Notes under the pieces: model-generated
What the model was told of the DNA's origin: nothing
Database searches by the model: none
Seen by the model: the letters and a program-made list of their open reading frames with translations, nothing else
Program-made: the position numbers and the translations under genes
Assembly: GCF_052425735.1 (NCBI RefSeq)
Contig: NC_135764.1
Location: 6,696,001-6,760,000 of the forward strand
DNA from: Oculina patagonica
Lineage: Eukaryota
Length of the DNA stretch: 64,000 nt
Direction: 5' to 3'
Shown here: positions 1 through 63,792 of the stretch, piece by piece
How the letters are laid out: each line of letters opens with the position of its first letter
Numbering within the stretch: position 1 is the first letter of the stretch

Positions 1-1172
1 CACAATAAGCTATCGCTTCTACGATTATCTGCGTTGGGCGCCAGTTGTCGACAAACACTTTCTTCTTGACACGCCCCGGAATCTGCGAAAGAAAAAAGAA
101 TTAAAGAAAGTGAAGTTGATGATCAGTTTCAACAGTCATGAGGGTGCTGCCTCTCTTGGATATATGGCGAACTCGTCTTTTGGGATGGCGGCAAGTTTGG
201 ACGATGGAGTGAGTCCGTCATTTTTCAAGGAATTTGTAACAAAGCTTGCCCACGCTCGAAACAGCAGGTGAGTTGCGATTTTGTTGTCAGGTGAACTTAA
301 TCTCGTTCCTTGGGCACTCTTCCTTTCAAACATTTCCCTCCCCTTCCACTTTAAAGCAAAAAGTGCCCTGGAACGAGGTTAAGGTAAATCACATGATGCA
401 ATCGTTTCAACGCCAAACACAGTTAATCTTGTCTATAACAGGGACTTTGGGCTAATTCCAAACACAACAGCGCCAGGCCATTGGTCCTTGTTTTCCTCCT
501 GTAGCTTTTGAAGAAACAATTAACAAAAAATCACTTCGTTTGCCGTTCTTTAGGAAGAAAACCGCCGACATTATCGCGGACGCGTTGCAGTTCATGTACA
601 CCCCATGGCCCGACAACAGTGATAAATACGCACTAAGAAGCCAACTTGTGGACCTTATTGGTGATTATCTGTACTTCGCACCAAGCCATGAGGTCGCCGA
701 TATTCACAGCAGAGTTGCTCCAGTGTACATGTACGAGTTCGCTCAGCGTCCAAAGAACGCCAGCATTGTCGAAGAGTGGATGGGTGTGGTTCATGGGGAA
801 AACGTGGCATATGATTTTGGTATCCCGCTTTGGTTCCCAAGGTATAACGCAGCCGACAAAAACGTCAGTTTGTTTATCATGACAGTGTACACGAACTTCG
901 CCAAGACCGGCGATCCAACACCACAGCCAGTTAGCGGTGTTACGTGGGAGAAGTATAACTCCAGTCACAGAGCCTATCTACGAGTTCACCCCAATCCCAA
1001 AATGGCGGCGACGTTTGCTCCTCGGCGAATGGCTTTCTGGAATGATTACCATCCTAAACTGGAGCAAGTAAATTTTGAAATTAAGAAAGATGTGGTCAGC
1101 GGCACTACCGCTTGTGTTGCGATGGCAATGTTTTATCACATTGCACTTGCTGTCGCTTTGGTGATGTTCTGA
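1..1172 (+). CDS. Carboxylesterase/cholinesterase-like gene copy 1, 5'-partial; exons <1..267 and 554..1172
   Basis: Frame from nt 2 reads TISYRFYDYLRWAP...ISFNSHEG...HARNS; donor AG|GTGAGT at 268, acceptor TTCTTTAG|G at 553; exon 2 has WMGVVHGEN (catalytic His) and a hydrophobic tail. Confidence 0.9.
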
Positions 1173-1180
1173 CGTTTAGT

Positions 1181-1335
1181 ATTTGCACACAGAATGGCTT
1201 TCTGGAATGATTACTATCTCAAACTTACGCAAATGAAATTCGATACGAACAAGGATATAGTCAGCGGAGTTATCGCCGGTCATGCTGCGCTTTGGCAGTT
1301 ATTTTTCAGATTTTATTCTCCAACTCTGCTTTGTA
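1181..1335 (+). pseudogene. Relic 3' end of a divergent carboxylesterase paralog directly after the copy 1 stop
   Basis: Encodes MAFWNDYYLKLTQMKFDTNKDIVSG, homologous to MAFWNDYHPKLEQVNFEIKKDVVSG; a hydrophobic tail (ALAVIFQILF) follows in another frame. Confidence 0.75.
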
Positions 1336-1501
1336 GAGTACACATAACGTGCAAAACGAGGACATATATCTCACGGTATTTGTAGTCGTCTCATTACCCC
1401 CCGACAGTGCGAAAAGTTATAAAATGTGGCAAGTCAGCATTTTAGGGAAATAAATCGTTGGATAATAAATCTCTTATAAGACATTTTACTCTACATTTTT
1501 A

Positions 1502-5646: not shown

Positions 5647-8150
5647 ATGTTTTCGATGCTGCTGCTAAGGTTGTCCATATTCTGCGCGTTTTTGCTGCTT
5701 GTAACATCCGAGTCAGTAAAAGTGTCAACAAAGTATGGAGACATCGAAGGTCTTGTGGCATCATACCCGAATGCCTCGGCTCCGTTCAAGTCTGTCAACA
5801 AGTTTCTTGGCGTTCCTTTCGCTGCTCCGCCGATTGGAGAGCTCAGACTAAAACCACCACAACCGCCAGTGGCGTGGGAAAACGTGCGGCAAGCGACAAA
5901 GAATGGAAACATTTGTTGGCAAAATGAATATTTTGAATTTTATGTCAAAATGTTTGCTACAAAATTCACGTACAGTGAGGATTGCTTGTATCTCAACGTC
6001 TTCAGCCCGAACGTCAGCTTACGTTTACCCGTGATGGTTTATATTCACGGTGGAGGTTACGAGATCGGTTCAGCAATAACACAACCCAGCGATATGTTGG
6101 CTCTTCAAGGTGTGGTAGTAGTTGTCATCCAGTATCGTCTCGGTCCGCTTGGTTTTTTGACGACCGGAGATTCGGCGTCCCTTGGAAATTTCGGAATGTT
6201 GGATCAGGTTCAAGCTCTACAGTGGGTTAAAGAAAACATTGAATATTTTGGCGGGGACCCCAACAAGGTGACCATATTTGGATTAAGTGCTGGTGGATCA
6301 AGTGTATCCCTGCATCTACTGTCGCCTCTATCGCAGGGCCTCTTTCACCAAGTCATCGCAGAGAGCGGAGTGGATTTGAGTCCATTTGCGATTCAACCAG
6401 TTTCTTTAGGTCTCCGTTTTGCCAAAGAGCTCGCTCAAAAGCTGGATTGTACAACAGGCGATCACAGCGCCATGGTTGCCTGCATACGCGAGAAACGAGA
6501 CACGGACATACAGAAAGCCTCCGAGTCAATCGTCTATCCGTTCTATGATTATCTGCGCTGGGCGCCAGTTGTGGACAAACACTTTCTTCTTGACACTCCC
6601 CGGAATCTGCGAAAGAAAGAAGAATTCAAGAAAGCAAAGTTGATGATCAGTTTCAACAGTCAGGAGGGTGGGCAGGCTCTTGGATGGATGGCGAATCTTT
6701 CTTTCGGGATGGCAGCAAGTGTGGACAATGGAGTAAGTCCGTCATTTTTCAAGGAATTCGTAACAAAGCTTGCACATGGGCGAAACAGTAGGTGAGCTGC
6801 AATTTTTTGTCAGGTGAACCCATCCTCGTTCCCAGGGCGCATTTCCCGCCCCTCCCACTTTGAAGGGAAAAGCTCCCTGCGAACGAGGTTGAGGTAAACC
6901 ACATGATGCAATTCCACTCCAAATTTGGTAAATCAAAGAACAGTTCCAAAATATTTTTGTGATTTAAGTTTTTGGGATCATAAATATATTTGCTTGTTCC
7001 TATTTTGGTAAGATGTGCCCTTGTTGAAGTTGAAGCCAGACCCCTTTATCAATATGAGCATGTTTTGCTATAATAATGGGATATAACTTGAAATTTTCCC
7101 ATTGACATGCTCTGTACCCAAATTTCAAAAAATCCTTCACTTTATCTGGTCTTAAAACAAATCGTATCTTCTTTGGAATATTCTTGCTTCTTAACTTCGT
7201 CTGATCAAGGTTTTGCAAAAAAATCTTGATCGGTTGTAGGTCAACACATTTGTCCTTAATTGTTCGGTCTGAGGCCAGATAATTCCGAATTCGATATTAT
7301 AATGATTTCATCGGGCATTGTTGCGAATTTTTGCGGGCTAAAATGGAGAATTCAGTGGGCTGAGTTGGTGGGTCCGGTAATCAAACTCGGCCAAATTGGT
7401 GGGAGGCGAGCACTCTCGCCACTGCGCCATCCCTGTCCCCTAGATGTGATCTCAAGGTTCTTGTTTTTGAACTGTTGGTAACGGGGTAACAATTAACAGC
7501 AACTCACGTCCCCCCTCCCCCTCCTTTTTAGGAAGAAAACCGCCGACCTCATCGCAGACGCGTTGCAGTTCATGTACACCCCATGGCCTGACAACAGTGA
7601 TAAATACGCACTAAGAAGCCAACTTGTGGACCTCATCGGTGATTATATGTACTTTGCACCAAGCCACGAGGTCGCCAATATTCACAGCAAAGTTGCACCA
7701 GTGTACATGTACGAGTTCGCTCATCGTCCAAAGAACGCCAGCATTTTCGCAGAGTGGATGGGTGTGGTTCATGGCGAGAACGTGCCGTTTGATTTTGGAA
7801 TCCCGCTTTGGTACCCCGGGTATGACGCGGCCGACAAAAACGTCAGTTTGTTTATCATGGAAGCATACGCAAACTTCGCGAAGACCGGCGATCCAACACC
7901 ACAGCCAGTCAGCGGTGTTACGTGGGAGAGGTACAACTCCAGTCACAGATCTTATCTGCGAGTTCACCCCAATCCCAAAATGGCGGCGACGTTTGCTCCT
8001 CGGCGAATGGCTTTCTGGAATGATTACCATCCCAAATTGGAGCAAGTAAGTTTTGAAACCAAGAAAGATGTTGTCAGCGGTACTAGCTCCGGTGTTGCCA
8101 TGGCAATGTTTTATCACATTGCACTTGCTTTTGTTTTGGTGATGTTCTGA
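5647..8150 (+). CDS. Carboxylesterase/cholinesterase-like copy 2; exons 5647..6791 and 7532..8150 (587 aa)
   Basis: Signal peptide; FLGVPFAAPPIGELR, SEDCLYLN, HGGG, QYRLG, GNFGMLDQ, FGLSAG, NSQEG, WMGVVHG; GT-AG phase-2 intron joins NSR|KKTAD in frame. Confidence 0.93.
6821..6891. mobile_element. Short intronic MITE (CAACCTCGTTCCCAG family); orthologous copies at ~299-380, ~27961-28050 and ~41621-41704
   Basis: CATCCTCGTTCC...GAACGAGGTTG flanked by AGGTGAACC/AGGTAAACC; absent at the same intron position in copies 3, 5 and 7. Confidence 0.7.
7384..7440 (-). mobile_element. 5' head fragment of a tRNA-derived SINE in the copy 2 intron
   Basis: Reverse complement reads CAGGGATGGCGCAGTGGCGAGAGTGCTCGCCTCCCACC (A-box-like tRNA 5' arm). 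Confidence 0.55.
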
Positions 8151-17464: not shown

Positions 17465-19612
17465 ATGTTTTCGACGATACTGTTATCGTTGTCCATATTT
17501 TGTGCATGTTTGCCGCTGCTCAAGGCCAAGTCAGTAAGAGTGTCAACAAAGTATGGAGAAATCGAAGGTCTTGTGACCTCGTACCCGAATGCCTCGGGTC
17601 CGTTCAAGTCTGTCAGCAAGTTTCTTGGCGTTCCTTTCGCCGCTCCGCCGATTGGAGAGCTCAGACTAAAACCACCACAACCGCCAGTGGCGTGGAAAAA
17701 CGTTCGGCAAGCGACAAAGCATGGAAACATTTGCTGGCAAATGAAACTTTTTGAATATTATTTCAAAATGTTCGCTTCAAATTTCACGTACAGCGAGGAT
17801 TGCTTGTATCTCAACGTCTTCAGCCCGAACCTCAGCTTGGGTTTACCCGTGATGGTTTATATTCACGGTGGAGCCTACGAGTACGGTACAGCAATCACCC
17901 AACCCAGCGATATTTTGGCTCTGTACGGTGTGGTTGTAGTTGTAATCCAATATCGTCTCGGTCCATTTGGTTTCTTGACGACCGGGGATTCTGCCGCCCC
18001 TGGGAATTTTGGAATGTTGGATCAAGTCGAAGCACTCAAGTGGGTCAAAGATAATATTGCAAACTTTGGCGGGGACCCCAGCAAGGTGACCATATTTGGA
18101 TTAAGTGCTGGTGGATCAAGTGTAACCCTGCATCTACTGTCGCCTCTATCGGAGGGCCTCTTTCACCAAGTCATCGCAGAGAGTGGCGTGGATTTGAGTC
18201 CTTTTGCAACTCAACCCGTTTCGTATGGCCTCCGTTTTGCCAAAGAGCTCGCTCAAAAGCTGGATTGTACAACAGGCGATCACAGTGCCATGGTTGCCTG
18301 CATACGCGAGAAACGAGACACAGACATACAGAAAGCCTCAGACACAATTAACTATCGGTTCTATGATTATCTGCGCTGGGCGCCAGTTGTGGACAAACAC
18401 TTTCTTCTTGACACGCCCCGGAATCTGCGAAAGAAAGGTGAATTCAAGAAAGCAAAGTTGATGATCAGTTTCAACAGTCAGGAGGGTGGTGCCTCTCTTG
18501 GATTTATGGCGAACAGTTCTTTTGGAATGGCGACAAGTGTGGACGACGGAGTAAGTCCGTCATTTTTCAAAGAATTTGTAACAAAGCTTGCCCACGCTCG
18601 AAACAGCAGGTAAGTTGCAATTTTGTTGCCAGTTTGAATCACGTGATGCAATCGTTTCCACTCCACGCGCGGAAAAGTGACGAACAAGTGCGAAATATTT
18701 CATTGAAGTTTTTGGAATCATAAATTTATTTACTGGATGATGTGCCCTTTAAAGATTTTTCGAGGTTTAAAAGGTTGAAGTTGTAGACTACTTTATTAAT
18801 ATGGGCATGTTTTGTGACAATAATGACATATACCTTGAAACTCTTCCATTACACATGTTGTGCGCATCAGACATTCACTCACATTGCGCTAATGGTCAGG
18901 TCGTAAGAATCTTAAGGTCCTTGTTTTCCACCTGTTTCATATAAGGGGAACAGATAACAACAAATCACTTTGTTTCCGGTTCTTTAGGAAGAAAACCGCC
19001 GACCTCGTCGGGGACGCGTTGCAGTTCATGTACACCCCATGGCCTGACAACAGTGATAAATACGCACTAAGAAGCCAACTTGTGGACCTCATCGGTGATT
19101 ACATCTACTTTGCACCAAGTCACGAGGTCGCCGATATTCACAGCAAAGTTGCTCCGGTGTACATATACGAGTTCGCTCAGCGTCCAAAGAACGCCAGCAT
19201 TTTTGCTGAGTGGATGGGCGTGGTACATGGCGAGAACGTGGCATTTGATTTTGGAATCCCGCTTTGGTACCCCGGGTATGACGCGGCCGACAAAAACGTC
19301 AGTTTGTTTATCATGGAAGCGTACGCAAACTTCGCCAAGACCGGCGATCCAACACCACAGCTAGTCAGCGGTATTACGTGGGATAGGTACAACTCCAGTC
19401 ACAGAGCTTACCTGCGAGTTCACCCCAATCCAAAGATGGCGGCGACGTTTGCTCCTCGTCGAATGGCTTTCTGGAATGATTACCATCCTAAACTGGTGCA
19501 AGTAAATTTTGAAACCAAGAAAGATGTGGTCAGCGGTACTAGCGCCGGTGTTGCCATGGCAATGTTTTATCACATTGCACTTGCTTTCGTTTTGATGTTT
19601 TCTGAAATTTAG
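17465..19612 (+). CDS. Carboxylesterase/cholinesterase-like copy 3; exons 17465..18609 and 18988..19612 (589 aa)
   Basis: Same motifs; donor GTAAGT at 18610, acceptor TCTTTAG at 18987; a small indel near the stop gives tail ...LMFSEI. Confidence 0.93.
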
Positions 19613-21800: not shown

Positions 21801-22022
21801 NNNNNNNNNNNNNNNNNNNNNNNNNNNNNNNNNNNNNNNNNNNNNNNNNNNNNNNNNNNNNNNNNNNNNNNNNNNNNNNNNNNNNNNNNNNNNNNNNNNN
21901 NNNNNNNNNNNNNNNNNNNNNNNNNNNNNNNNNNNNNNNNNNNNNNNNNNNNNNNNNNNNNNNNNNNNNNNNNNNNNNNNNNNNNNNNNNNNNNNNNNNN
22001 NNNNNNNNNNNNNNNNNNNNNN

Positions 22023-25785: not shown

Positions 25786-25946
25786 NNNNNNNNNNNNNNN
25801 NNNNNNNNNNNNNNNNNNNNNNNNNNNNNNNNNNNNNNNNNNNNNNNNNNNNNNNNNNNNNNNNNNNNNNNNNNNNNNNNNNNNNNNNNNNNNNNNNNNN
25901 NNNNNNNNNNNNNNNNNNNNNNNNNNNNNNNNNNNNNNNNNNNAAT

Positions 25947-40028: not shown

Positions 40029-40061
40029 ATGTTTTCGACGCTACTGATACACTTACCTTAA
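40029..40061 (+). pseudogene. Orphan start (7 codons) of a deleted copy-8/9-type gene, forming mini-ORF MFSTLLIHLP*
   Basis: 39.3-40.05 kb matches the upstream regions of copies 8 and 9 through AGAGAAGCATGTTTTCGACGCTACTGATA, then switches to copy-3-type promoter sequence. Confidence 0.8.
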
Positions 40062-40441: not shown

Positions 40442-43400
40442 ATGTTTTCGACGATACTGTTATCGTTGTCCATATTTTGTGCATGTTTGCCGCTGCTCAA
40501 GTCAGAGTCAGTAACAGTGTCAACAAAGTATGGAGACATCGAAGGTCTTGTGACCTCGTACCCGAATGCCTCGGGTCCGTTCAAGTCTGTCAGCAAGTTT
40601 CTTGGCGTTCCTTTCGCTGCCCCACCGATTGGAGAGCTCAGACTAAAGCCCCCACAACCGCCAATGGAATGGAAAAACGTTCGGCAAGCGACAAAGCATG
40701 GAAACATTTGTTGGCAAACGAATCTTTTTGAATTCTATTTCAAAATGTTCGCTTCAAATTTCACGTATAGCGAGGATTGCTTGTATCTCAACGTCTTCAG
40801 CCCGAACGTCAGCTTGAGTTTACCCGTGATGGTTTATATTCACGGTGGAGCTTACGAGATCGGTTCAGCAATAACACAACCCAGCGATATTTTGGCTCTG
40901 TACGGTGTGGTTGTAGTTGTGATCCAATATCGTCTTGGTCCATTCGGTTTCTTGACGACCGGCGATTCGGCGGCCCCTGGGAATTTTGGAATGTTGGATC
41001 AGGTTCAAGCACTCAAGTGGGTCAAAGCTAATATTGCAAACTTTGGCGGGGACCCTAACAAGGTGACCATATTTGGATTAAGTGCTGGTGGAACAAGTGT
41101 ATCCCTGCATCTACTGTCGCCTCTATCGGAGGGCCTCTTCCACCAAGCCATCGCAGAGAGTGGAGTGGATTTGAGTCCCTTTGCGACTCAGCCAGTTTCT
41201 TATGGCCTCCGTTTTGCCAAAGAGCTTGCTCAAAAGCTGGATTGTACTACGAGCGACCACGAAGCAATGGTTGCCTGCATACGCGAGAAACGAGACACGG
41301 ACATACAGAAAGCCTCCGACTCAATGAACTATGGGCTCTATGATTATCTGCGCTGGGCGCCAGTTGTGGACAAACACTTTCTTCTTGACACGCCCCGCAA
41401 TCTGCGAAAGAAAGGAGATTTCAAAAAAGTGAAATTGATGATCAGTTTCAACAGTCAGGAGGGTGGTGCCTCTCTTGGTGTGATGGCGAACAGTTCTTAT
41501 GGGATGGCGACAAGTGTGGACGATGGAGTGAGTCCGTCTTTTTTCAAAGAATTTGTAACAAAATTTGCCCACGCTCGAAACAGCAGGTGAGTTACGGTTT
41601 TTTTTTAGTCAGGTGAACCTAACCTCATTCCTTGGGCGCTTTTCCCTTTCAAGTTTTCCCGCCCCTTCCACTTTGAAGGAAAGAACGCCCTAGGAACGAG
41701 CTTGAGGTAAATCACGTGATGCAATCGTTTCCACTCTAAACTCGGTAAATTTTATAGGTGGTTTTCACTGTCATGCCACTGTAACGTCACGAAAAAATAA
41801 ATCCAAAACTGTCGAGTAAAAAAAAATCAAGAATATTACAGGTTGTAGAGAACTACTATATAAAATTCTTGTCCAAGTCTCTCATGTCTGTTCGTTATTC
41901 CGTACTCGAGCTATCCGTCAAAATGTTTCACTCAAATTTAGAGAGCACAGTATGGAAACGCCATGTTGGAGTCCAACTGCTTGGGCTCCAACACGGCGGC
42001 CGGAAATCAATGAAAACATCTGGCATTTAATTCTGCTACTAAAAGCGGTCAGATCATGAACACCCCCATGAACCAGTTAACATTCCGACGCATAAACACT
42101 CAACTGTTCAAATTGTAAAAAATTGCAGGATGAAGCATTTTTGTTTAAGAAAACGTGACAGCCTTCCGGCCGCCATCTTTGTTCTCGTGTGGCGTGAAAC
42201 TCCGAAATTCAAAATGCTCTATCTTTAAGACGGCGAATGCTATCGAGCTAAAAAAAACCTTCAACAAGTTAATTGCCAATGAAGGATAAAAACTCAGGGA
42301 TTTTGCGATTCTGGGATTTAGAATTTTGATGACGTCACGTAAAAACCAAGAATAACGGGGATTTTGCGGTAATTCCAAACACAACAGCGCAAGGCCATTG
42401 GTCCTTGTTTTTCTTTTGAGGAAACAACTTACAAAAATAGGTCCCCAATGGGTCCATGTGATCTGCCGGTATACTGTAACAGCATTGCTAAAGTTACTGT
42501 CTTCGGTTTTTCGGGTAACACAAGCTGATCCGTCACGAAAGTTATAACTTCATTTAAAACGTTTAAAGGTCGCTACCCTAATCAGTAATGCATGCAAAGC
42601 AACATGCCACCAGAAAGTGGTGGTAAACAAAAAGGTGCAAATTTAGCGAGATTCAGCTGCATTTCGTCAGTCAAGCAAACGTGCAAAAAACATTGGGGTC
42701 AGTCTTCGGATAATTTTATTTGACGATCAGCGTTCGAACATGCGTTAAGCTGTGCATGGCGCTTTCGCGTGAGAAATACAGAAGCCCTCAACAGAATGCC
42801 TTTGGAACATTTGATTCAATTGATCATTTAAAAAAAAACTGCCGCGAGGTTGAGTAGATCAGTTCTCGGATCGTGCAATAAGCGAGCGTTCATCGATTCC
42901 GATAGTACAACAAGCTTGCGTTGACTTCTTCCGATTTTCATATTGTTTCACATATATTTATTCAGTTGATCTAGTGATTGATTTGAAACACATGCACTCT
43001 CATGGCAGCTGAAACCCGTCGTACACAAAATGTGCAAATCAAGCGGGATATAGAGCTCTGGGGAGCCTGGGCTCCTCTTTGTTACACACTTTACATTTAC
43101 ACACACTTATATCAGAAACGGCAAAATTTTGCGTTTATTATTATTATATTATTATTATTAGCAACTCGGCGCTACGCGCCTCGTTGGCTATAACGATCTC
43201 ATATCCAACAAGCGCGAGTAGAATTGCAATATTTGAGCTCCCCAACTGTTTTCGTTGACGCGTATCGGCTACCATATTTGTGGTAAATGGTATATGAGCT
43301 CATATACCATTGCCTGGAATTACGCAGGAATTGAAATATACCATTGCTAGTTTTTAATAAAATTCTATTGTTACACACTTTCTTTTGTTACACACATTCC

Positions 43401-44114
43401 ATTCTCCTTCGATAGCAATATGTACTGAATGGCATTATGCCAAATGGCATAATGGCAGCAGAGCACAACAAATCACTTCGTTTCCCGTTCTTTAGGAAGA
43501 AAACCGCCGACCTCATCGCGGACGCGTTGCAGTTCATGTACACTCCATGGCCTGATAACAGTGATAAATACGCACTAAGAAGCCAACTTGTGGATCTCAT
43601 CGGTGATAACATCTACTTTGCACCAAGTCACGAGGTCGCCGATATTCACAGCAAAGTTGCTCCGGTGTACATGTACGAGTTCGCTCAGCGTCCAAAGCAC
43701 GCCAGCATTTTCGCTGAGTGGATGGGCGTGGTTCATGGCGAAAACGTGGCGTTTGATTTTGGCATCCCGCTTTGGTTTCCCAGGTATGATGCAGCCGACA
43801 AAAACGTCAGTCTGTTTATCATGGCAGTGTACACGAACTTCGCCAAGACCGGCGATCCAACACTACAGCCAATCAGCGGTGTTACGTGGGATAGGTACAA
43901 CTCCAGTCACAGAGCTTACCTGCGAATTGACGCTCATCCCAAGATGGCGGCGGCGTTTGCTCCTCGGCGAATGGCTTTCTGGAATGATTACTATCCTCAA
44001 CTGGCACAAGTGAATTTTGAAACCAAGACAGATGTGGTCAGCGGTACTAGCGCTAGTGTTGCCATGGCAATGTTTCATTACATTGCACTTGTCGTCGTTG
44101 TGATGTTGTTCTGA
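40442..44114 (+). CDS. Carboxylesterase/cholinesterase-like copy 6; exons 40442..41586 and 43496..44114 (587 aa)
   Basis: Same motifs; intron enlarged to ~1.9 kb by repeat insertions. Confidence 0.93.
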
Positions 44115-48177: not shown

Positions 48178-50482
48178 ATGTTTTCGACGCTGCTGATAAA
48201 CCTTCCTATATTCTGTGCGTTTTTGCCGCTGCTCAAGTCAGAGTCAGTAAGAGTATCAACAAAGTATGGAGTCATCGAAGGTCTTGTAGAATCGTACCCG
48301 AATGCCTCCGGCCCGTTCAAGTCTGTCAGCAAGTTTCTTGGAGTTCCTTTCGCCGCTCCACCGATTGGAGAGCTCAGACTAAAGCCCCCACAACCGCCAA
48401 TAGCATGGAAAAACGTTCGGCAAGCGACAAAGCATGGAAACATTTGTTGGCAAAGTAAGCTTTTTGAATTTTATATCAAAATGTTTACTCCAAATTTCTC
48501 GTACAGCGAGGATTGCTTGTATCTCAACGTCTTCAGCCCGAACGTCAGCTTAAGTTTACCCGTGATGGTTTATATTCACGGTGGAGGATATGAGGGTGGC
48601 ACATCAGTCACATACCCCAGCGATATTTTGGCTCTGTATGGTGTGGTAGTGGTTGTGATCCAATATCGTCTCGGTCCACTTGGTTTCCTGACGACCGGGG
48701 ACTCGGCGGCCCCTGGGAATTTTGGAATGTTGGATCAAGTCGAAGCACTCAAGTGGGTCAAAGAGAACATTGAAAATTTTGGCGGGGACCCCAGCAAGGT
48801 GACCATATTTGGATTAAGTGCTGGCGCAACCAGTGTGTCGCTACATTTGCTGTCACCTCTATCAGAGGACCTCTTCCACCAAGTCATTGCAGAAAGCGGC
48901 GTGGATTTGAGTCCCTTTGCGATTCAGCCAGTTTCGTTTGGCCTCCGTTTCGCCAAAGAGCTCGCTCAAAAGCTGGATTGTACAACAAGAGACCACGAAG
49001 CAATGGTCGCCTGCATACGGAGGAAGAGAGAGGCGGACATACAGATAGCTTCCGAGTCAATAAACTATCGGTTCTATGATTATCTGCGCTGGGCGCCAGT
49101 TGTGGACGATCACTTTCTTCTTGACACGCCCCGGAATCTGCGAAACAAAGGAGAATTCAAGAAAGTGAAGTTGATGATCAGTTTTACCAGTCAGGAGGGT
49201 GGTGCAAGTGTCGGTTATTTCGCAAACTCGTCTTTGGGGATGGCGGCAAGTGTGGACGATGGAGTGAGTCCGTCATTTTTCAAGGAATTTTTAACAAAGC
49301 TTGCCCATGGGCGAAACAGCAGGTGAGTTGCGATTTTGTTGTCTGTTGAATTTGAACCACGCGATTCGACGGACAAGAAAGTTGACCGGCAAGTGCAAAA
49401 AAATTGTGATTTGAGTTCTAGGGATCATAACATTTTTTGCTTGTTTCCATTTAGGTAAGATGGACCCTTGAAATATTTTTTCAAGGTTTAAAATTAGAAA
49501 CTAGACTACTTTAATGGGATATAGCTTCAAAATCTTCCCGCTGTTTTATTCTGGGTATCTAATTTACTCCTTCCCCCGCAAAAATTTACTCACACTTCGC
49601 TAAGAAACGATTCTACTTCTGAACAAAAATGGATCAACATACTCAACACACCCCCACATACGTCAAATGAAGTGAACCTTTTGAAGGTTGAACCTTTTGA
49701 ACCTTTTGCCTCTTCTTTACAACATTTCTGTCAAAACTTTTGAACTCAGACCAAACAATTCAAACACAACATCGTTGGGTCATTGGGATCATAAGTTCCT
49801 TGTTTTCTACCTTATGAGGGGAACAGTTAATAACAAATCACTTTGTTTCGCCTTCTTTAATAGAAAGAAAACTGCCGACCTCATCGCAGACGCATTGCAG
49901 TTCATGTACACTCCATGGCCTGACAACAGTGATAAATACGCATTAAGAAGCCAACTTGTGGACCTCATCGGTGATTATATGTACTTCGCACCAAGTCACG
50001 AGGTCGCCGATATTCACAGCAAAGTTGCTCCGGTGTACATGTACGAGTTTGCTCATCGCTCAAAGAACGCCAGTAATTACCCTGAGTGGATGGGTGTGGT
50101 TCATGGCGAGAACGTGCCATATGATTTTGGAGTCCCGCTTTGGTTCCCCAGGTATGATGAAGCCGACAAAAACGTCAGTTTGTTTATCATGGAAGCGTAC
50201 GCAAACTTTGCCAAGACCGGCGATCCAACACCACAGCCAGTCAGCGGTGTTACGTGGGAGAGGTTCAACTCTAGCCACAGAGCTTACCTGCGACTTGACG
50301 CTCATCCCAAGATGGCGGTGGCGTTTGCTCCTCGCCGAGTGGCTTTCTGGAATGATTACCATCCTAAACTGTCGCAAGTAAAATTTGAAACCAAGAAAGA
50401 TGTGGCCAGCGGTACTAGCGCTAGTGTTGCCATGGCAATGTTTTATCACATTGCACTTGTCGTCATTTTGATGATGTTCTGA
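48178..50482 (+). CDS. Carboxylesterase/cholinesterase-like copy 7 (close paralog of copy 5); exons 48178..49322 and 49864..50482 (587 aa)
   Basis: Same motifs; near-identical to copy 5 in exons, intron and flanks. Confidence 0.93.
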
Positions 50483-55581: not shown

Positions 55582-58527
55582 ATGTTTTCGACGCTACTGA
55601 TAACGTCCGCATTCTGTGCGCTTTTGCCTTTGGTGAAGTCACTAGCAGTGGTGGAGTCAGTAACAGTGCCCACAAATTATGGAGACATCGAAGGTGTTAC
55701 GACTCCATACCCTGACGCCACTGGCCAGTTCAAGTCTGTCAGCAAGTTTCTTGGCGTCCCTTTCGCCGCTCCGCCGATTGGAGAGCTCAGACTAAAGCCA
55801 CCACAACCGCCACAAGAGTGGAAACCGAACGTTCGCCAAGCGAAAACGCATGGGGACGTTTGCTGGCAAGGTGACGACTTTGAATTCTTCCTCAAATTAT
55901 TCACTCCTGTTTTCTCACATAGCGAGGATTGCTTGTATCTCGATGTCTACACCCCGAACGTCAGCTTGAGTTTACCCGTACTGGTTTATATTCACGGTGG
56001 CGGCTACGAGGGCGGTACATCACGAATTTTCCCCAGCGATATCTTGGCTTTGTACGGTGTGGTAGTAGTTGTGATCCAATATCGTCTCGGTCCATTTGGT
56101 TTCCTCACAACCGGAGATTCGGCAGCCCCTGGAAATTTCGGGATGCTAGATCAGGTTCAAGCACTGAAATGGGTCAAAGAAAACATTGAACACTTTGGCG
56201 GAGACCCCGAGAAGGTGACCATATTTGGAGAAAGCGCTGGCGCAACCAGTGTTACCCTACATCTGTTTTCTCCGCTATCAGATGGACTCTTCCACCAAGT
56301 CATTGCAGAGAGCGGTGTAGATTTGACTCCCTTTGCGATTCAACCCGTTTCTTATGGCCTTCGTTTCGCCAAAGAGCTCGCTGAAAAGCTGGATTGTATT
56401 GCAAGCGACCACGAAGCAATGGTCGCCTGCATACGCGAGAAAAAAGGCGCGGACATACAGAAAGCTTCTGAGTCAACAAACTATCGGTTCTATGATTATC
56501 TTCGCTGGGCGCCAGTTGTGGACAATCACTTTCTTCTTGACACGCCTCATAATCTGCGAAAGAAAGGAGAATTCAAGAAAGTGAAGTTGATGATCAGTTT
56601 TAATAGTCATGAGGGTTCAACCACTCTTGGTGTGATGGCAAAATCGTCTTTTGATTTGACAGATAGCGTGGACGATGGAGTGAGCCTTTCTATCTTCAAG
56701 AAATTTGTAAAACATCTTGCCTATGCTAGAACCAACTGGACCAACGGGTGAGTTGAAATGATGTTTTTGTGTTTGTCTTAGCCATTTATTTTAAATTGAG
56801 GTCATTGGACCTTGTGTGAAAACAAATTCATGCTTATCCTAGGAATCGTGGTTTGAATAATACAATTTAACATATATGTAGCGTAATAAACTGCTACTTG
56901 AAAATTCAATGAAGGTGTTGGTATAAATAAGAAGCCACTTATAATGGCATGACATTGCTAAAAATGTACTGTTAAAATCAGTAATCATAAAAAATTGTAA
57001 TTTCACTTTCAACCTTGATAAAGCCAAATCAAGAGACTTCTACAATCTCTTCATTGATAAAATTCACACCGGAGGTCCGACCGGTCCCAAAAGATGGAGT
57101 GAAACACTTTCTTTAAATGATGAACATTGGGCAAAGATATTTAAATTAACACGAAAACTTTGCATGGAAACGAAACTAAAAGAATTTAAATTTAAATTGA
57201 TTCATAGAATCGTTGTGACAAAGAAAGAACTATTCAAATACGGTATTAAAACAGACGATAGATGCTGCTTTTGTGGGGAAAAGGACTCAATCAACCACAC
57301 TTTTATTCACTGCTCTTTTACGAAATCATTCATACAAAAAGTCATTCTGTGGTTTAATACAACGTACAATTTACAGATCTCTCCAACAATAGAGCAACTT
57401 TTATTTGGAATTACCTCTAACTTATATGAGAAAAGTATGACCAACAAATTCAATTACTTTACACTACTTATGCGCTATTATATCTAAAATTGTAAATTAA
57501 ATAATTAGCCTATTGTCCTCCATGACTTTGTGAATGCTGCACAACAAAGAGAACTAATTGAAAACACCGTTGATAACTCAGAAACCAATAGAGGGTAAAA
57601 TATCTCATCTCTCCTTAACGTGTAAGGAGTTATATTGTAAGTAACAAAAAAGAGGAAGAAGATTGTCACCGTAGCTGACTAAGTAACTAAGTAACTGTAC
57701 ATAGAGTAGTTAAGAAAAGTAGGGTAATTTGTAGTTTGTGTTTAAGTCTGCGTAGTATTGTAAGTAATTGTATTGTTGTGTGTTATTAATAAAAAAAATA
57801 AAATAAAATAAAAAAATAAAAAAAATAAAAAAAAATTGTTCAAATGTGGTTTGGTTACGGACGGATATGACAGTAGCGGTTTAAAACTTTGAAAACGTCT
57901 AGCAGACGTTTTTAAATTCGACATTTATTCCATCTATTCACACCTTTTAGAATGGATTATGCCTTTCTTTGTTGTTCAAAGGCTTTGTTGCTGATCACTA
58001 AGTGCACCCTCATAATTCTATCATAGTTAACACTAAAACGTATACGAATTCCCTTGATACTGCCGCTTTAAGCAGCTCTACATTGAGCAGGTGAGCACAA
58101 TAGAGATGTTTCGCATAGCTCCACTGCCTACGCAAATTAGCCACTGTAGTTGAAAACACCTACTAAATAAGCAAGTTACAAATTAAACAATGAAAGACCG
58201 TTTGTTGTCATCAGTTCAACAGCTCTGACAATGTGAATTGTCGATGAGAGTTTGACGAACTCTCGTTCTCGTTTGGCCCTAGTTAGTGATTGTAGATAAG
58301 AGTTGACGAAAACTCTCATGAGAGTTGACTCTCATCAACTCTAATCCTTGTTTGGCCCAGGCTTTACTCCAATCCTATCCATTTCTTTCTGCCTTTGCTT
58401 ACCTTTTGTAACAAAATGGCTTTGTTTCCCGTTCTTTAGAAATAAAACCGGTGACCTCATCGCGGACGCGTTGGAGTTCATGTACACCCCATGGCCTGAC
58501 AGCAGTGATAAATACGCATTGCCATGA
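55582..58527 (+). pseudogene. Carboxylesterase copy 8 (GESAG type), probable pseudogene; exon 1 55582..56747 intact, exon 2 from 58440 with a 484-bp internal deletion and stop at 58525-58527
   Basis: After ...GATAAATACGCA (58518) the sequence jumps to TTGCCATGACAATG, matching copy 9 positions 63252 and 63737; catalytic His and in-frame tail lost. Confidence 0.9.
56999..57830 (+). mobile_element. 5'-truncated L1/Tx1-group LINE in the copy 8 intron
   Basis: FKFKLIHRIV...CCFCGEKDSINHTFIHC (C-terminal CCHC finger), A-rich tail, TSD AAAAATTGT; empty site in the copy 9 intron (~62378). Confidence 0.85.
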
Positions 58528-59036
58528 CAATGTTTCTTCATGTTGGACTTCTCGTTATTTTGGCGCTGCATGTTCTGAATTTCACATGTAGGACCTCACT
58601 AGGATGTTATGACATCCCTAGTTTAAAATTAACGTTGCTTTCTAAAGGCTTTTTAAGGAACTATGTCACGGATTTAACAGATTTTTGAACAGTCAAAACT
58701 TATATAAAGGCTGAATGAAACTTATTTTACGGGGTGAAAAGTCTACTGATTAACCGGCCGCACGCTTCTCTTTAGCAGCCAGTTGGTTAGTTCCTAAAAC
58801 AACAGTCATTGCTAACGTGACGACTCAGTTAGTGTTTTTGTATTGTGTATTAAACTGATTGTTTTATTTACTCAACTGAAACTAACGAAATGGAAGTTTG
58901 TGAAACATAAGCTAGAGGAAAGGGGACATTGATAACTGTCATCTCTTGTGAGTCAAAATGTGAATTATCCCCAAGTACATCACTTATGCAGCTAAGCAAA
59001 GAATGGTACTCACGCCACACATGATGACAACACGTA

Positions 59037-60184: not shown

Positions 60185-60512
60185 TGAGAGGACTCAATGG
60201 GGTGGTGGCTTTTACGGTTAACGGTTAAAGTTTTGGCTTTTTACGGCTAAAGATTAATTTATTTACCTAACGGTTTACAGAAGTTAACAGTTAATTTTCA
60301 TTGTTTTAAAAGTTAAAAATTAATTGCCATTATTGAACAACATATTTTAGGTCTCAGGGCCATTCTGGGACGATGAAGTGAACTAGTTTGGTTTATTTAT
60401 AATTACTGACCAATTTTTTACGTTTAACATATTTTACGGCTAACGGTTAAAATGTTCCAATTTTTACGGCTAACGGCTACATTTTTGGCCGTTATACCCC
60501 ATTGAGACCCTC
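60185..60512. mobile_element. MITE with 4-bp TSD GAAC and GAG..CTC-like ends (Sola-like, inferred)
   Basis: GAGGACTCAATGGG / CCCATTGAGACCCTC; TTTACGGCTAACGG repeats; empty site GTGGAACAATAC near 53845. Confidence 0.7.
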
Positions 60513-60958
60513 GAACAATACTGTTTTGTCATTCCCTTGTTAATGATGAAATTGAATTATTGCATGCACACTAAGAATTTGCATATGACACTGTTTTACT
60601 AATAATACTTTATTCAAATACAAAAACAAAAAATAGTATTTTTTAGTTATTGAAAAGGAGGACCATGAGGTTAGCCCTATTTAGGTCTTCTGACTACTTT
60701 TCCACACAACCCCCTTGGATTTTGGCTGTTTGTTTGGCTGGCGATGTGAACAAGATTTTCTCGACAGTTTTTGCCTGAGGCCCGGCCCCGAGTGATTGAA
60801 AGCGCAATGCATGCAAAAAATGACAAAGCACATTTTTGGGTCAGTCGTGCATAATAGCATGTATTAGTTTTTTGTCGAGCTTGCAACTACTGAATTCACG
60901 GGTCTGCCTTTTCATTCACATATAAGTGGCTGTTAAAAGTGTTTCCCTTAAGAGAAAC

Positions 60959-63792
60959 ATGTTTTCGACGCTACTGATAACGTCCGCATTCTGTGCGATT
61001 TTGCCTTTGGTGAAGTTAGTAACAGTGCCCACAAATTATGGAGACATCGAAGGTGTTACGACTCCATACCCTGACGCCACTGGCCCGTTCAAGTCGGTCA
61101 GCAAGTTTCTTGGCGTTCCTTTCGCCGCTCCGCCGATTGGAGAGCTCAGACTAAAGCCACCACAACCGCCACAAGAGTGGAAGCCAAACGTTCGCCAAGC
61201 GAAAACGCATGGGGACGTTTGTTGGCAAGGTGACGACTTTGAATTCTTCATCAAGATATTCACTCCAGTTTTCTCATATAGCGAGGATTGCTTGTATCTC
61301 GACGTCTTCAGCCCGAACGTCAACATGACTTTACCCGTGCTGGTTTATATCCACGGTGGCGGCTACGAGGGCGGTACATCAAGAATATTCCCCAGCGATA
61401 TCTTGGCTTTGCACGGTGTGGTGGTAGTTGTGATCCAATATCGTCTCGGTCCATTTGGTTTCCTCACAACCGGAGATTCTGCAGCCCCTGGAAATTTCGG
61501 GATGCTAGATCAGGTTCAAGCACTGAAATGGGTCAAAGAAAACATTGAACATTTTGGCGGGGACCCCGAGAAGGTGACCATATTTGGAGAAAGCGCTGGT
61601 GCAACGAGTGTAACCCTACATCTGTTTTCTCCGCTATCAGATGGACTCTTCCACCAAGTCATTGCAGAGAGCGGTGTAGATTTGTCTCCCTTTGCAATTC
61701 AACCCGTTTCTTATGGCCTCCGTTTCGCCAAAGAGCTTGCTGAAAAGCTGGATTGTAGCACAAGCGACCACGAAGCAATGGTTGACTGCATACGCGAGAA
61801 GAAAGGCGCGGACATACAGAAAGCTTCCGAGTCAATAAACTATCGCTTCTACGATTATCTGCGCTGGTCCCCAGTTGTGGACAAACACTTTCTTCTTGAC
61901 ACGCCTCGAAATCTGCGAAAAAAAGGAGAATTCAAGAAAGTGAAGTTGATGATCAGTTTCAACAGTCATGAGGGTTCAACCACCCTTGGTGTGATGGCAA
62001 AATCATCTTTTGATTTGACAGACAGTGTGGACGATGGAGTGAGCCTTTCCATCTTCAAGAAGTTTGTAAAACAGCTTGCCTATGCTAGAACCAACGGAAC
62101 CAACGAGTGAGTAGCAATGATGCTTTTGTGTTTGACTTTGCCGTTTATTTTAAATTGAGGTCATTGGACCTTGTGTGAAAACAAATTCATGCTTATCCTA
62201 GGAATCGTGGTTTGAACAACACAATTTACATAGCGTAATAAACCTGCATTCCAAACTTAATAAAATACCTAATTAAAGGGACAGTGTCACCCTGAGTTAG
62301 TGCTACTTGAAAATGCAATGAGGGTGTTGGTCATAATGGCCTAGCTGACATTGCTAAAATGTACTGCACTAATCATGAAAATTGTTCAAAGATGGTTTGG
62401 CTACCGACGGATATGACAGTAGCGATTTAAAACTTTTAAGATTGTTTCCGCACAATTTTCGAGCAATACAGGCAAAAATAAAGTTACCAAAAAAGCCCTC
62501 TTAGCATGGCAACAGCTTTAGTACAGCTAACAAAAACCTGCCAAAAATTTAGCACTAAAGCTGACCCCGCGAGAGAAAAATGGATTTGAAGTTGTCTTTA
62601 TTTCAGTTAAAGCGGACGTTTTGCGCCAGTTCAAAACAAAATAGCGCGCGTTTTATACATTTTTCGAGGTTTGACTTTAATTTTCTCGAGAATGCTTTAG
62701 AATTTAATTGCGGGGTCACTAAGACAAATGAATTTCGATGAGATCTTTTAAATAGTATACAAAATGTTGCCGTGCAATGAGTAGATTTTTGGTACTTAAT
62801 TTTCGCACTCATTGCTCGAACTTTGAGCGGAATCCGTCTTAAAACGTCTGACAGACGTTTTCAAATTAAACATTTATTCCATCTATTCACACCTTTTAGA
62901 ATGGATTATGCTTTTCTTTGTTGTTCAAAGGCTTTGTTGTTGTTTTTTTTTTTAATGTTTTGTTGTTTATCACTAAGTGCGCCCTCATAATTCTATCAAA
63001 GTTAACACCAAAACGTAAAAGAATTACCGTAATACTGTCACTTTAAGCAGCTCTATATTGTGCAAGTGAACACAATAGAGTATCTATTTCGCCCGTCTTA
63101 CTCCAATCCTATCAATTTCTCTATGCCTTTGATTACCTTTTGCAACAAAATGACTTTGTTTCCCGTTCTTTAGAAATAAAACTGGTGACCTTATCGCAGA
63201 CGCGTTGGAGTTCATGTACACCCCATGGCCTGACAACAGTGATAAATACGCACTAAGAAGCCAACTTGTGGACCTCATCGGTGATTATATCTACTTTGCA
63301 CCAAGTCACGAGGTCGCCGATATTCACAGCAAAGTCGCTCCGGTGTACATGTACGAGTTCGCCCATCGGCCGAAAAACGCCAGCATTTACCCTGAGTGGA
63401 TGGGTGTGGTTCATGGCGAAAACGTGGGTTTCGACTTTGGAACTCCGCTTTATTTTCCCAATTATGACGAGGCCGATAAAAATGTCAGTTTGTTTATAAT
63501 GGCAGCATACGCAAACTTCGCCTGGTTCGGCAATCCAACACAAACGCCAGTCAGCGGTGTCACGTGGGAGAGGTACAGCACGAATACCCAAGCTTACCTG
63601 CGAATTGATGCTCATCCCAAGATGGAGACGGCGTTTGCTGCACGTCGAATGGCTTTTTGGAATGACTACTATCCTAAGCTGCAGGAAGTGAAGTTTGACA
63701 CCGAAAAAGAAGTACCTAAGGCTGGTAGCTCTAATGTTGCCATGACAATGTTTCTTCAGGTTGGACTTCTCGTTATTTTGGCACTGTTCTAA
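60959..63792 (+). CDS. Carboxylesterase/cholinesterase-like copy 9 (GESAG type); exons 60959..62106 and 63174..63792 (588 aa)
   Basis: ATG at 60959; FGESAG, NSHEG, WMGVVHG; splice GA|GTGAGT ... TTTAG|A; hydrophobic tail. Confidence 0.93.
62440..62838. mobile_element. TTAA-flanked MITE in the copy 9 intron
   Basis: TTAA-GATTGTTTCCGC..TCGAGCAAT / ATTGCTCGA..GCGGAATCCGTC-TTAA; absent in the copy 8 intron (~57890). Confidence 0.75.

What the first reader, a model, noticed from the sequence alone, without database searches (positions are those of the whole stretch)
1..63792. Array of nine or more surface-anchored cholinesterase-like hydrolases diversified at gorge-lining positions
Seen: the scaffold is highly conserved, but differences cluster in short blocks. 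Omega loop after CWQ: NEYFEFYVKMFATK / MKLFEYYFKMFASN / MKTFESYIKMFAPN / SKLFEFYIKMFTPN / TNLFEFYFKMFASN / GDDFEFFLKLFTPV. Post-oxyanion segment: GYEIGSAITQ / AYEYGTAITQ / AYEFGSAVTQ / GYEGGTSVTY / GYEGGTSRIF. Acyl-loop region: SIVYPF / TINYRF / TMNFPF / SMNYGL. Helix after the catalytic Glu: GQALGW / GASLGF / SNSLGY / GASVGY / STTLGV. Also GDYLYF / GDNNFF / GDNIYF and HGENVAY / VPF / LPF / VGF. Known: in the AChE/carboxylesterase fold these segments line the active-site gorge. Inference: a repertoire of extracellular membrane-tethered esterases with tuned specificities, e.g. for microbial or symbiont lipids, signals or allelochemicals. This is the best candidate for an undescribed system here.
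Basis: partly seen in the sequence, partly recalled or inferred. Interest (0 to 1): 0.8.

Follow-up and report, generated by a model that had tools for sequence, protein, structure and literature searches.

The report
Coral tandem array of membrane-tethered carboxylesterases
This stretch of the stony coral Oculina patagonica carries nine tandem copies of a cholinesterase-like esterase gene whose differences concentrate in the loops around the active site, an ordinary kind of lineage-specific enzyme-family expansion that no paper I could find describes for corals.

Summary
The window (Oculina patagonica, CM126641.1, about 6.70-6.76 Mb) holds nine same-strand, two-exon COesterase (PF00135) genes. 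Seven are complete and intact. c1 starts off-window. c8 is broken by a 484-bp deletion. Both assembly gaps are intergenic, beside a Penelope-like element, and touch no esterase exon.

The proteins have a signal peptide, an intact Ser-Glu-His triad and oxyanion hole. Their C-terminal hydrophobic tail ends the protein and aligns with the Torpedo AChE GPI peptide. They fail the tests for true cholinesterases and for neuroligins.

Amino-acid differences are enriched about threefold in active-site loops (38/82 against 103/463 sites, p=1.5e-5). Across 114 coral homologues, 21 of the 30 most variable columns lie there, while the catalytic Ser and Glu stay conserved.

dN/dS is below 1 overall (0.44 in loops, 0.27 elsewhere). 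Site models give omega of about 2-3 at 2-3% of codons. This is significant with 19 sequences and borderline with the window copies alone. It is also confounded by demonstrable gene conversion.

c3 is transcribed and spliced as modelled.

Verdict: a real birth-and-death esterase family whose substrate pocket has diversified. It is a new member of a known kind. The substrates are unknown, and the symbiont or microbe role is untested.

The parts
1..1172 (+). c1: end of exon 1 (1-267), intron, exon 2 (554-1172). The gene starts upstream of the window; the full product is P0005, 584 aa.
5647..8150 (+). c2 (= ACROYT_G024569, P0008): exon 1 5647-6791, exon 2 7532-8150; 587 aa; GLSAG elbow; intact triad.
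   Evidence: RNA k-mer share 0.49-0.55 in one study
17465..19612 (+). c3: exon 1 17465-18609, exon 2 18988-19612; 589 aa. Transcribed and spliced exactly as modelled.
   Evidence: zero depth over the intron; GT..AG joint 18609>18988 in 3 runs
21801..25943 (.). Intergenic stretch: two assembly gaps (21801-22022, 25786-25943) around a perfect 1624-nt inverted repeat (22023-23646 / 24067-25690) of a Penelope-like retroelement (RT + GIY-YIG). Not part of any esterase gene.
26773..29150 (+). c4 (= ACROYT_G024572, P0002): exon 1 26773-27917, exon 2 28535-29150; 586 aa.
35411..37788 (+). c5 (= ACROYT_G024573, P0003): exon 1 35411-36555, exon 2 37170-37788; 587 aa.
40442..44114 (+). c6 (= ACROYT_G024575, P0001): exon 1 40442-41586, 1909-nt intron, exon 2 43496-44114; 587 aa. 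AlphaFold2 model has pLDDT 94.
48178..50482 (+). c7: exon 1 48178-49322, exon 2 49864-50482; 587 aa. Youngest pair with c5 (95% aa identity, dS 0.095).
55582..58700 (+). c8 (= ACROYT_G024577, P0027, annotated as 417 aa): exon 1 55582-56747 is intact (GESAG). The exon 2 remnant from 58440 has a 484-bp internal deletion after 58518, which shifts the frame and removes the catalytic His. The intron carries a transcribed retroelement fragment (about 56997-57780).
60959..63792 (+). c9 (= ACROYT_G024578, P0022): exon 1 60959-62106, exon 2 63174-63792; 588 aa; GESAG elbow. The most divergent copy in the window.

Best explanation
The window is part of a cluster of at least 210 kb of type-B carboxylesterase (COesterase, cholinesterase-fold) genes in the stony coral Oculina patagonica.

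**What each intact copy encodes.** Each encodes a secreted, N-glycosylated enzyme of about 587 aa. It has a working Ser-Glu-His triad and oxyanion hole. It is held on the outer face of the cell membrane by a C-terminal tail, most probably exchanged for a GPI anchor.

**How the array evolves.** It grows and decays by tandem duplication. The c5/c7 pair is recent and c8 is dying. The copies also exchange sequence by gene conversion or unequal crossing-over.

**Where the copies differ.** The fold is under purifying selection. The residues that line the substrate gorge are the family's hypervariable positions, and a handful of them carry a signal of diversifying selection. These residues are the entrance part of the omega loop, the segment after the oxyanion hole, the first half of the acyl loop, the helix after the catalytic Glu, and positions 398-400, 432 and 444-446 in Torpedo numbering.

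**Most likely consequence.** The array is a repertoire of ecto-esterases with different substrate preferences, analogous to insect carboxyl/cholinesterase or mammalian CES expansions.

**Shown here:** gene models, domain, fold, triad conservation, non-random location of the differences, recombination, and transcription and splicing of c3.

**Inferred:** catalytic activity, GPI anchoring, and that the differences change specificity.

**Unknown:** the substrates.
For: **Identity and fold**
- Pfam COesterase at E=3e-112 for exon 1 and 7e-28 for exon 2.
- The AlphaFold2 model has pLDDT 94.2 and TM-score by target length 0.86-0.92 to neuroligins, CES1, BChE and AChE.
- The triad and oxyanion residues align with Torpedo S200, E327, H440 and G118-G119.
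- Ser is kept in 112/114 and Glu in 114/114 scleractinian homologues.
- The C-terminus aligns with the Torpedo AChE H (GPI-signal) peptide and ends within 0-3 residues of the hydrophobic stretch.

**Location of the differences**
- Window copies: odds ratio 3.0, p=1.5e-5; pN is 2.7-fold higher in the loops with similar pS.
- Family-wide: 21 of the 30 most variable columns fall in 67 loop positions out of 360 (odds ratio 14, p=1e-10).
- Omega is 0.44 in loops against 0.27 elsewhere (p=0.007).

**Site models on 19 exon-1 CDS**
- M1a/M2a p=5.5e-4, M7/M8 p=3.9e-5, M8a/M8 p=2.3e-5.
- Best sites are c3 L95 (Tc D72 equivalent) and S274. Next come Y140 (Tc 122), A343/S344 (Tc 330/331), S351 and S105.

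**Expression and spread**
- RNA contigs show the c3 exons, an empty intron and the GT..AG joint.
- The same two-exon arrays exist in other coral assemblies.
- The family reaches Montipora, Porites and Desmophyllum.
Against: - No activity, anchoring or substrate data exist.
- Omega in the active-site loops is significantly below 1 (p=1e-6).
- With only the window copies, M1a/M2a is not significant for exon 1 (p=0.086) or exon 2.
- Recombination is detectable (PHI p<0.001; exon 1 and exon 2 trees differ). It inflates site-model tests.
- With separate trees for thirds of exon 1, only the first third is clearly significant.
- The site models are my own GY94 implementation. Branch lengths were only rescaled in most fits, and posteriors are NEB.
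- I had no coordinates. 'Gorge-lining' therefore rests on sequence alignment to TcAChE/BChE, and the omega-loop alignment contains a 4-residue length difference.
- The residue before the nucleophile is Leu instead of the usual Glu in c1-c7, which might lower activity.
Confidence: 0.6

Rival explanations
1. Neutral relaxation. The copies are redundant esterases. After each duplication the flexible active-site loops simply drift faster than the core, and the apparent omega above 1 at a few codons is an artefact of gene conversion among paralogues.
For: - Loop omega is 0.44, well below 1.
- M1a/M2a is not significant in the window copies.
- PHI shows recombination.
- The partitioned tests lose most of the signal.
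- One copy (c8) is already a pseudogene.
Against: - The enrichment persists within coil and within helix classes.
- The same positions are hypervariable across 114 homologues while the catalytic residues and neighbouring positions stay fixed.
- The first third of exon 1 keeps a significant omega of 3-4 class with its own tree.
- The overall omega of about 0.3 shows the copies are maintained.
Confidence: 0.25
2. Non-catalytic surface recognition or adhesion proteins (cholinesterase-like adhesion molecules such as neuroligin, glutactin or gliotactin). The variable loops around the gorge mouth would form a binding surface for partners such as neurexin-like proteins, symbionts or skeleton matrix.
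For: - The best PDB sequence and fold matches for exon 1 are neuroligins.
- NCBI names relatives 'neuroligin-4, X-linked-like'.
- A Desmophyllum skeletal-proteome preprint lists 'neuroligins' among matrix proteins. Their identity with this family could not be checked.
Against: - The nucleophile Ser, the Glu and the His are all retained, family-wide for Ser and Glu. Neuroligins lack the Ser.
- There is no transmembrane-plus-cytoplasmic tail.
- AChE, BChE and CES score practically the same as neuroligins, and AChE scores best for exon 2.
- No esterase or neuroligin term occurs in the Oculina skeletal proteome paper or its supplements.
Confidence: 0.07
3. True cholinesterases serving neuronal or non-neuronal acetylcholine signalling, duplicated for dosage or tissue-specific expression.
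For: - Exon 2 matches acetylcholinesterases best (E=5e-24).
- The GPI-type tail resembles the Torpedo AChE H form.
- The next named relatives outside corals are amphioxus 'cholinesterase 2-like'.
Against: - The choline-binding Trp84 is Phe or Tyr in 110/114 homologues.
- Glu199 is Leu in c1-c7.
- Tc Y121, F330, F331 and Y334 are Glu, small residues or variable residues.
- The third cholinesterase disulfide is absent.
- The omega loop is 4 residues shorter and matches carboxylesterases best.
Confidence: 0.05

Closest known systems
Insect carboxyl/cholinesterase (CCE) and mammalian CES expansions (type-B carboxylesterases, Pfam PF00135, ESTHER block C)
   Same: Same fold, triad, HGG(G/A) oxyanion motif and two N-terminal disulfides. 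Tandem lineage-specific arrays, birth-and-death evolution, and variation concentrated in the substrate pocket. The omega-loop region matches pNB esterase and CES2 best.
   Different: The coral proteins carry a C-terminal membrane or GPI signal, not an ER-retention signal or free secretion. The residue before the nucleophile is hypervariable (E46, L30, V13, A8 and others), not a fixed Glu. The substrates are unknown.
Acetylcholinesterase, GPI-anchored H form (Torpedo californica, e.g. PDB 2w6c, 6g1u)
   Same: Overall fold (TM-score by target length about 0.89-0.91). Best sequence match for the C-terminal third. The C-terminal 'SGTS + hydrophobic tail' aligns with the Torpedo H peptide. Ecto-enzyme topology.
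   Different: Lacks Trp84, Glu199 (in c1-c7), the aromatic gorge lining and the C402-C521 disulfide. The omega loop is shorter. It is therefore not a member of the cholinesterases proper.
Neuroligins / cholinesterase-like adhesion molecules
   Same: Top PDB hits by sequence for exon 1 and by Foldseek. GenBank names relatives 'neuroligin-4, X-linked-like'.
   Different: The catalytic Ser is retained. There is no single-pass transmembrane segment followed by a cytoplasmic PDZ-binding tail. The name is an annotation artefact of best-hit transfer.

Membership tests
Type-B carboxylesterase/lipase (Pfam PF00135 COesterase) | Profile match above the curated threshold | tested here: met
   376.6 bits for exon 1 and 98.3 bits for exon 2, against a cut-off of 27.
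Type-B carboxylesterase/lipase (Pfam PF00135 COesterase) | Alpha/beta-hydrolase fold of the cholinesterase type | tested here: met
   AF2 model pLDDT 94.2; Foldseek TM-score by target length 0.86-0.92 to NLGN, CES1, BChE and AChE.
Type-B carboxylesterase/lipase (Pfam PF00135 COesterase) | Ser-Glu-His triad (GxSxG elbow) and HGG(G/A) oxyanion motif | tested here: met
   G(L/E)SAG, SQEG/SHEG and VHGEN align with Tc S200, E327 and H440. IHGG(A/G) aligns with the oxyanion glycines. c8 has lost the His through its deletion.
Type-B carboxylesterase/lipase (Pfam PF00135 COesterase) | Hydrolytic activity on carboxylic esters | not testable with these tools
   Needs recombinant protein.
True cholinesterase (AChE/BChE) | Choline-binding Trp84 (Torpedo numbering) | tested here: not met
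   Phe in all window copies. Family-wide counts are F84, Y26, H3, W1.
True cholinesterase (AChE/BChE) | Glu199 next to the nucleophile, and an aromatic gorge (Y121, F330, F331, Y334) | tested here: not met
   Leu in c1-c7 (Glu in c8 and c9). Glu at position 121. Small or variable residues at 330, 331 and 334.
True cholinesterase (AChE/BChE) | Third disulfide C402-C521 | tested here: not met
   Ala at the 402 position. No Cys in the catalytic part of exon 2.
Neuroligin / CLAM | Loss of the catalytic Ser | tested here: not met
   Ser present in all nine copies and in 112/114 homologues.
Neuroligin / CLAM | Transmembrane helix followed by a cytoplasmic tail with a PDZ-binding end | tested here: not met
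   The proteins end 0-3 residues after the hydrophobic segment.
GPI-anchored ecto-protein | N-terminal signal peptide, plus a C-terminal hydrophobic stretch at the very end preceded by small residues (omega region) | tested here: inconclusive
   Both features are visible: MFSTLLL... at the start, and ...VVSGTS(S/A)G followed by about 18 hydrophobic residues at the end. HMMER aligns the tail with the Torpedo AChE H peptide. No dedicated GPI predictor was available, so a tail-anchored transmembrane helix is not excluded.
GPI-anchored ecto-protein | Release by PI-PLC / lipid anchor chemistry | not testable with these tools
   Experimental.

The most novel reading that the evidence does not exclude
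The array is a diversity-generating repertoire at the coral's interface with its algal symbionts and microbes. Gene conversion would shuffle short gorge-lining cassettes among paralogues; for example, the same 'GGAYEYGTAIT' or 'GGGYEGGT' blocks recur on different backbones. Diversifying selection would keep the cassettes distinct. The result would be a panel of GPI-anchored ecto-esterases that hydrolyse microbial or algal ester signals or lipids.
Probability: 0.12. Interest if true: 0.7.

Novelty: new member of a known kind. Interest (0 to 1): 0.35.

Why it matters
Corals depend on chemical exchange with symbiotic algae and a surface microbiome, yet their extracellular hydrolases are almost unstudied.

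This family is large. More than 100 distinct exon-1 sequences at 67% identity or more turned up across stony corals. Its members look catalytically intact, are probably displayed on the cell surface, and vary exactly where substrates bind. It is currently mislabelled 'neuroligin-4-like' or 'hypothetical'.

Correct annotation matters for two reasons:
- It prevents false inferences about coral 'synaptic' genes in expression and skeletal-proteome studies.
- It marks a tractable set of enzymes for substrate profiling, and for comparing symbiotic with aposymbiotic colonies of this facultatively symbiotic species.

Conceptually it adds another example of a familiar pattern, not a new mechanism.

Tried and rejected
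- **Gaps breaking a gene.** Rejected: both gaps are intergenic.
- **Extra degenerate copies in the long spacers.** None found by tblastn.
- **Antisense ORF 7611-8117.** It lies inside c2 exon 2 on the other strand and is a by-product of the coding frame, so I did not pursue it.
- **Fetching more of the array.** Two look-ups (P0005, P0090) were not on record, so the full extent of the cluster was not walked.
- **Residue-level 3D mapping.** Not possible, because the structure tools return no coordinates. I used HMMER alignments to Torpedo AChE and human BChE instead. TcAChE itself never came into the top five printed alignments for the omega-loop or oxyanion region, so that part rests on motif anchoring.
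- **Literature.** Nine searches found no paper on this coral family. The carboxylesterase expansion in Acropora tenuis (PMC12314368) concerns PF02230, a different family. The Oculina skeletal proteome paper and its supplements mention no esterase or neuroligin. The Desmophyllum preprint's 'neuroligins' could not be traced to accessions.
- **Earlier scan notes.** Searching them for esterases elsewhere in this genome gave nothing.
- **Expression of c8 and c9.** Only weak, patchy contig coverage and no splice joint, so this is inconclusive.

Full report
**1. What is in the window**

ORF listing shows a repeated pair of + strand ORFs, one of about 382-400 aa followed by one of about 195-225 aa.

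The ends of the first ORFs and the sequence upstream of the second ORFs share a canonical donor (AG|GTGAGT or GTAAGT) and acceptor (TTTAG|). These join the two in phase 2. Spliced in this way, seven genes give uninterrupted products of 586-589 aa.

tblastn with one product finds exactly nine copies and no stray fragments.
- c1 begins upstream of the window; only its last 89 exon-1 codons (1-267) and exon 2 are present.
- c8 has an intact exon 1. Its exon 2 lacks 484 bp relative to c9 (c9 63253-63736). This shifts the frame and removes the catalytic His. GenBank annotates it as a 417-aa protein (P0027).

**2. The assembly gaps**

The gaps at 21801-22022 and 25786-25943 lie in the 7.2-kb spacer between c3 and c4. 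Between them sits a perfect 1624-nt inverted repeat (22023-23646 / 24067-25690). It starts at the very edge of the first gap and encodes a 5'-truncated Penelope-like element with RT and GIY-YIG domains.

No esterase exon is within 2 kb of either gap, and no esterase frame crosses one. The finding therefore does not depend on continuity across the gaps. I did not try to fill them.

**3. Origin**

Five of the spliced products are contained in or identical to annotated Oculina patagonica proteins: ACROYT_G024569, 572, 573, 575 and 578. c9 lies at 6,756,959-6,759,792 of CM126641.1 (GCA_052425735.1). The window is therefore stony-coral nuclear DNA.

More COesterase genes lie outside it.
- One is 7 kb downstream. 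It is intronless, divergent, has an intact triad and is also hydrophobic-tailed (L001 19662-21428).
- Two more lie about 125-138 kb upstream, one on the opposite strand (L002).

The cluster thus spans at least 210 kb, and 'nine or more' is correct.

**4. What the proteins are**

*Domain and fold.* Both exons match Pfam COesterase far above threshold. PDB sequence searches hit neuroligins, carboxylesterases, BChE and AChE at nearly equal E-values for exon 1. AChE is best for exon 2. pNB esterase and CES2 are best for the omega-loop and oxyanion region. An AlphaFold2 model of c6 is confident (pLDDT 94.2, pTM 0.90). It superposes on all these families with a TM-score by target length of 0.86-0.92.

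*Landmarks from the HMMER alignments (Torpedo numbering):*

| Torpedo landmark | Coral state |
|---|---|
| S200 | Ser in G(L/E)SAG |
| E327 | Glu in S(Q/H)EG |
| H440 | His in VHGEN |
| G117-G119 | GG(A/G) |
| C67-C94 | disulfide present |
| C254-C265 | disulfide present |
| C402-C521 | disulfide absent |
| W84 | Phe |
| Y121 | Glu |
| F288 / F290 | invariant Asp / Leu |
| E199 | Leu in c1-c7, Glu in c8 and c9 |

These features file the proteins under type-B carboxylesterases. They exclude membership of the true cholinesterases. Because the Ser is retained and there is no cytoplasmic tail, they also exclude the neuroligins.

*Topology.* There is a hydrophobic N-terminal signal sequence and six conserved N-x-S/T sequons. 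The C-terminus reads ...VVSGTS(S/A)G followed by about 18 hydrophobic residues and then the stop. HMMER aligns this tail with the GPI-signal (H) peptide of Torpedo AChE. A GPI anchor is therefore the most likely tether. A tail-anchored helix is not excluded.

**5. Are the differences really clustered at the gorge?**

From the alignments to TcAChE and BChE they map as follows.

| Coral block | Torpedo / BChE equivalent |
|---|---|
| Three residues after CWQ | Tc 70-72 (peripheral-site Y70 and D72; BChE D70) |
| Residues after K(M/L/I)F | Tc 85-87 |
| GG(A/G)YE(x)G... | Tc 119 and 122-128 |
| (S/T)(I/M)(V/N)(Y/F)(P/R/G)(F/L) | Tc 281-286, the first half of the acyl loop |
| G/S-x-x-(L/V)-G-x after the Glu | Tc 329-334 (BChE A328, F329, Y332) |
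| GD-x-x-x | Tc 398-400 (BChE F398 position) |
| I(F/Y/V)(A/P/E) | Tc 431-433 (W432) |
| HGEN(V/L)(A/P/G)(F/Y) | Tc 444-446 |

The omega-loop assignment is anchored on the Cys and contains a 4-residue length difference, so it is less certain.

*Window copies.* I used eight segments defined from those landmarks (82 codons).
- 46% of sites vary among c2-c7, against 22% elsewhere (odds ratio 3.0, p=1.5e-5).
- Nonsynonymous divergence is 2.7-fold higher (permutation p<0.0002). Synonymous divergence is similar (p=0.07).
- The enrichment holds within coil and within helices of the AF2 model.

*Family-wide.* I aligned 114 exon-1 sequences from many stony corals.
- 21 of the 30 highest-entropy columns fall in the five exon-1 segments (odds ratio 14, p=1e-10).
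- The Ser (112/114) and the Glu (114/114) are kept.
- The residue before the nucleophile is itself hypervariable (E46, L30, V13, A8, G6 and others). This extends the GLSAG/GESAG dichotomy noted earlier in the scan (s1-271199).

**6. Selection**

Pairwise dN/dS is 0.22-0.31. I wrote a GY94/F3x4 maximum-likelihood implementation.

| Data set | Test | Result |
|---|---|---|
| Window copies, exon 1 | M1a/M2a | 2dlnL 4.9, p=0.086 |
| Window copies, exon 1 | M7/M8 | 2dlnL 11.5, p=0.003 |
| Window copies, exon 1 | M8a/M8 | 2dlnL 8.2 |
| Window copies, exon 2 | M1a/M2a; M7/M8; M8a/M8 | 2dlnL 1.95; 5.4; 2.5; not significant |
| 19 exon-1 CDS | M1a/M2a | p=5.5e-4 |
| 19 exon-1 CDS | M7/M8 | p=3.9e-5 |
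| 19 exon-1 CDS | M8a/M8 | p=2.3e-5 |

A partition model gives omega of 0.44 in active-site segments against 0.27 elsewhere (p=0.007). The loop omega is significantly below 1.

The 11 added exon-1 CDS come from another Oculina paralogue and from arrays in four other coral assemblies. With them, omega is 2.2-2.9 at 2-3% of codons.

The best sites are c3 L95 and S274 (posterior above 0.95). Next come Y140, A343, S344, S351 and S105. Five of the ten candidate sites in the mature part lie in the active-site segments (p=0.024).

*Caveats.*
- The PHI test shows recombination among the copies (p<0.001).
- Exon 1 and exon 2 give different trees.
- The same gorge cassettes recur on different backbones.
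- With separate trees for thirds of exon 1, only the first third (omega loop) stays clearly significant: M1a/M2a p=0.007 and M8a/M8 p=0.0007. The last third is marginal at p about 0.06.

I conclude that diversification at the pocket is real. Adaptive change is plausible for a few positions but not proven.

**7. Evolutionary pattern**

In the exon-1 tree, c8/c9 and c5/c7 group with sequences from at least one other coral assembly. The c1-c4 and c6 copies form a group with only two sequences from a second draft assembly. The array is therefore a mix of older types and a recent local burst.

Promoter-proximal sequence of about 400 bp is shared within subgroups. Introns are largely unalignable and differ in length from 378 to 1909 nt. 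The same two-exon tandem architecture is present in the other assemblies.

**8. Expression**

RNA-library contigs from four runs were laid on c3.
- All four cover both c3 exons and give zero depth over the intron.
- Three carry the exact GT..AG joint 18609>18988.

c2 is held at 0.49-0.55 of its words by the runs of one study, but at only 0.10-0.18 by the runs of two other studies that hold c3 well. This hints at paralogue-specific expression. c8 and c9 are weakly and patchily covered, with no joint seen.

**9. Comparison and novelty**

Tandem, pocket-variable expansions of this very family are classical in insects (CCEs), mammals (CES), nematodes and amphioxus. The coral family differs in three ways:
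- its membrane or GPI tail;
- its variable elbow residue;
- its current mislabelling as neuroligin-4-like.

I found no paper that describes it. It is a new member of a known kind and of moderate interest. The suggested role towards symbiont or microbial esters remains a hypothesis.

Noticed in passing
window 22023-23646 and 24067-25690: A perfect (100%) 1624-nt inverted repeat of a 5'-truncated Penelope-like element (RT + GIY-YIG, with a weak C2H2 zinc-finger match at E=7e-4). It starts exactly at the edge of the first assembly gap and ends 95 nt before the second. It may be a real inverted dimer or a fold-back assembly artefact.
   Followed up: partly
window 58440-58700 (c8 exon 2): A 484-bp internal deletion relative to c9 (63253-63736) makes c8 a truncated gene or pseudogene. 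The C-terminal tail remnant is still recognisable out of frame (58524-58688).
   Followed up: yes
window 56997-57780 (c8 intron): A retroelement fragment (ORF 57164-57487 with a zf-RVT-like Cys/His motif). It is present in long RNA-library contigs of all four runs at depth 15-57, with the same five substitutions, so the transcripts probably come from other copies of the element.
   Followed up: partly
L001 19662-21428 (about 7 kb downstream of the window): An intronless, much more divergent COesterase gene (588 aa, GESAGG, intact triad, hydrophobic C-terminus) follows the two-exon array. It may be an older family member or a retrocopy.
   Followed up: partly
window 6280-6294 and the homologous elbow in all copies: The residue before the nucleophile Ser is Leu in c1-c7 and Glu in c8 and c9. 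Across 114 coral homologues it is hypervariable (E46, L30, V13, A8, G6, Q4 and others). This is unusual for a family where it is normally a fixed Glu.
   Followed up: yes
window, all copies (e.g. c3 exon 1 resembles c6, while c3 exon 2 resembles c2): The paralogues are mosaics. Exon 1 and exon 2 give different trees, the PHI test is significant, and identical gorge cassettes recur on different backbones, also in another coral's array (L003, L004).
   Followed up: yes
window 39600-40030 (upstream of c6) vs 60510-60955 (upstream of c9): A stretch of about 430 nt lying 415-840 nt upstream of the c6 start codon is 84% identical to the promoter-proximal 445 nt of c9. It may be the remnant of a lost c8/c9-type copy or a duplication-unit boundary.
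   Followed up: no
window 7611-8117 (- strand): A 168-aa ORF antisense to c2 exon 2. It has no independent support and is most likely a by-product of the coding strand.
   Followed up: no
window 58946-59733: An intergenic repeat with very high summed contig depth in RNA libraries (up to 1668). It is a high-copy transcribed repeat unrelated to the esterases.
   Followed up: no
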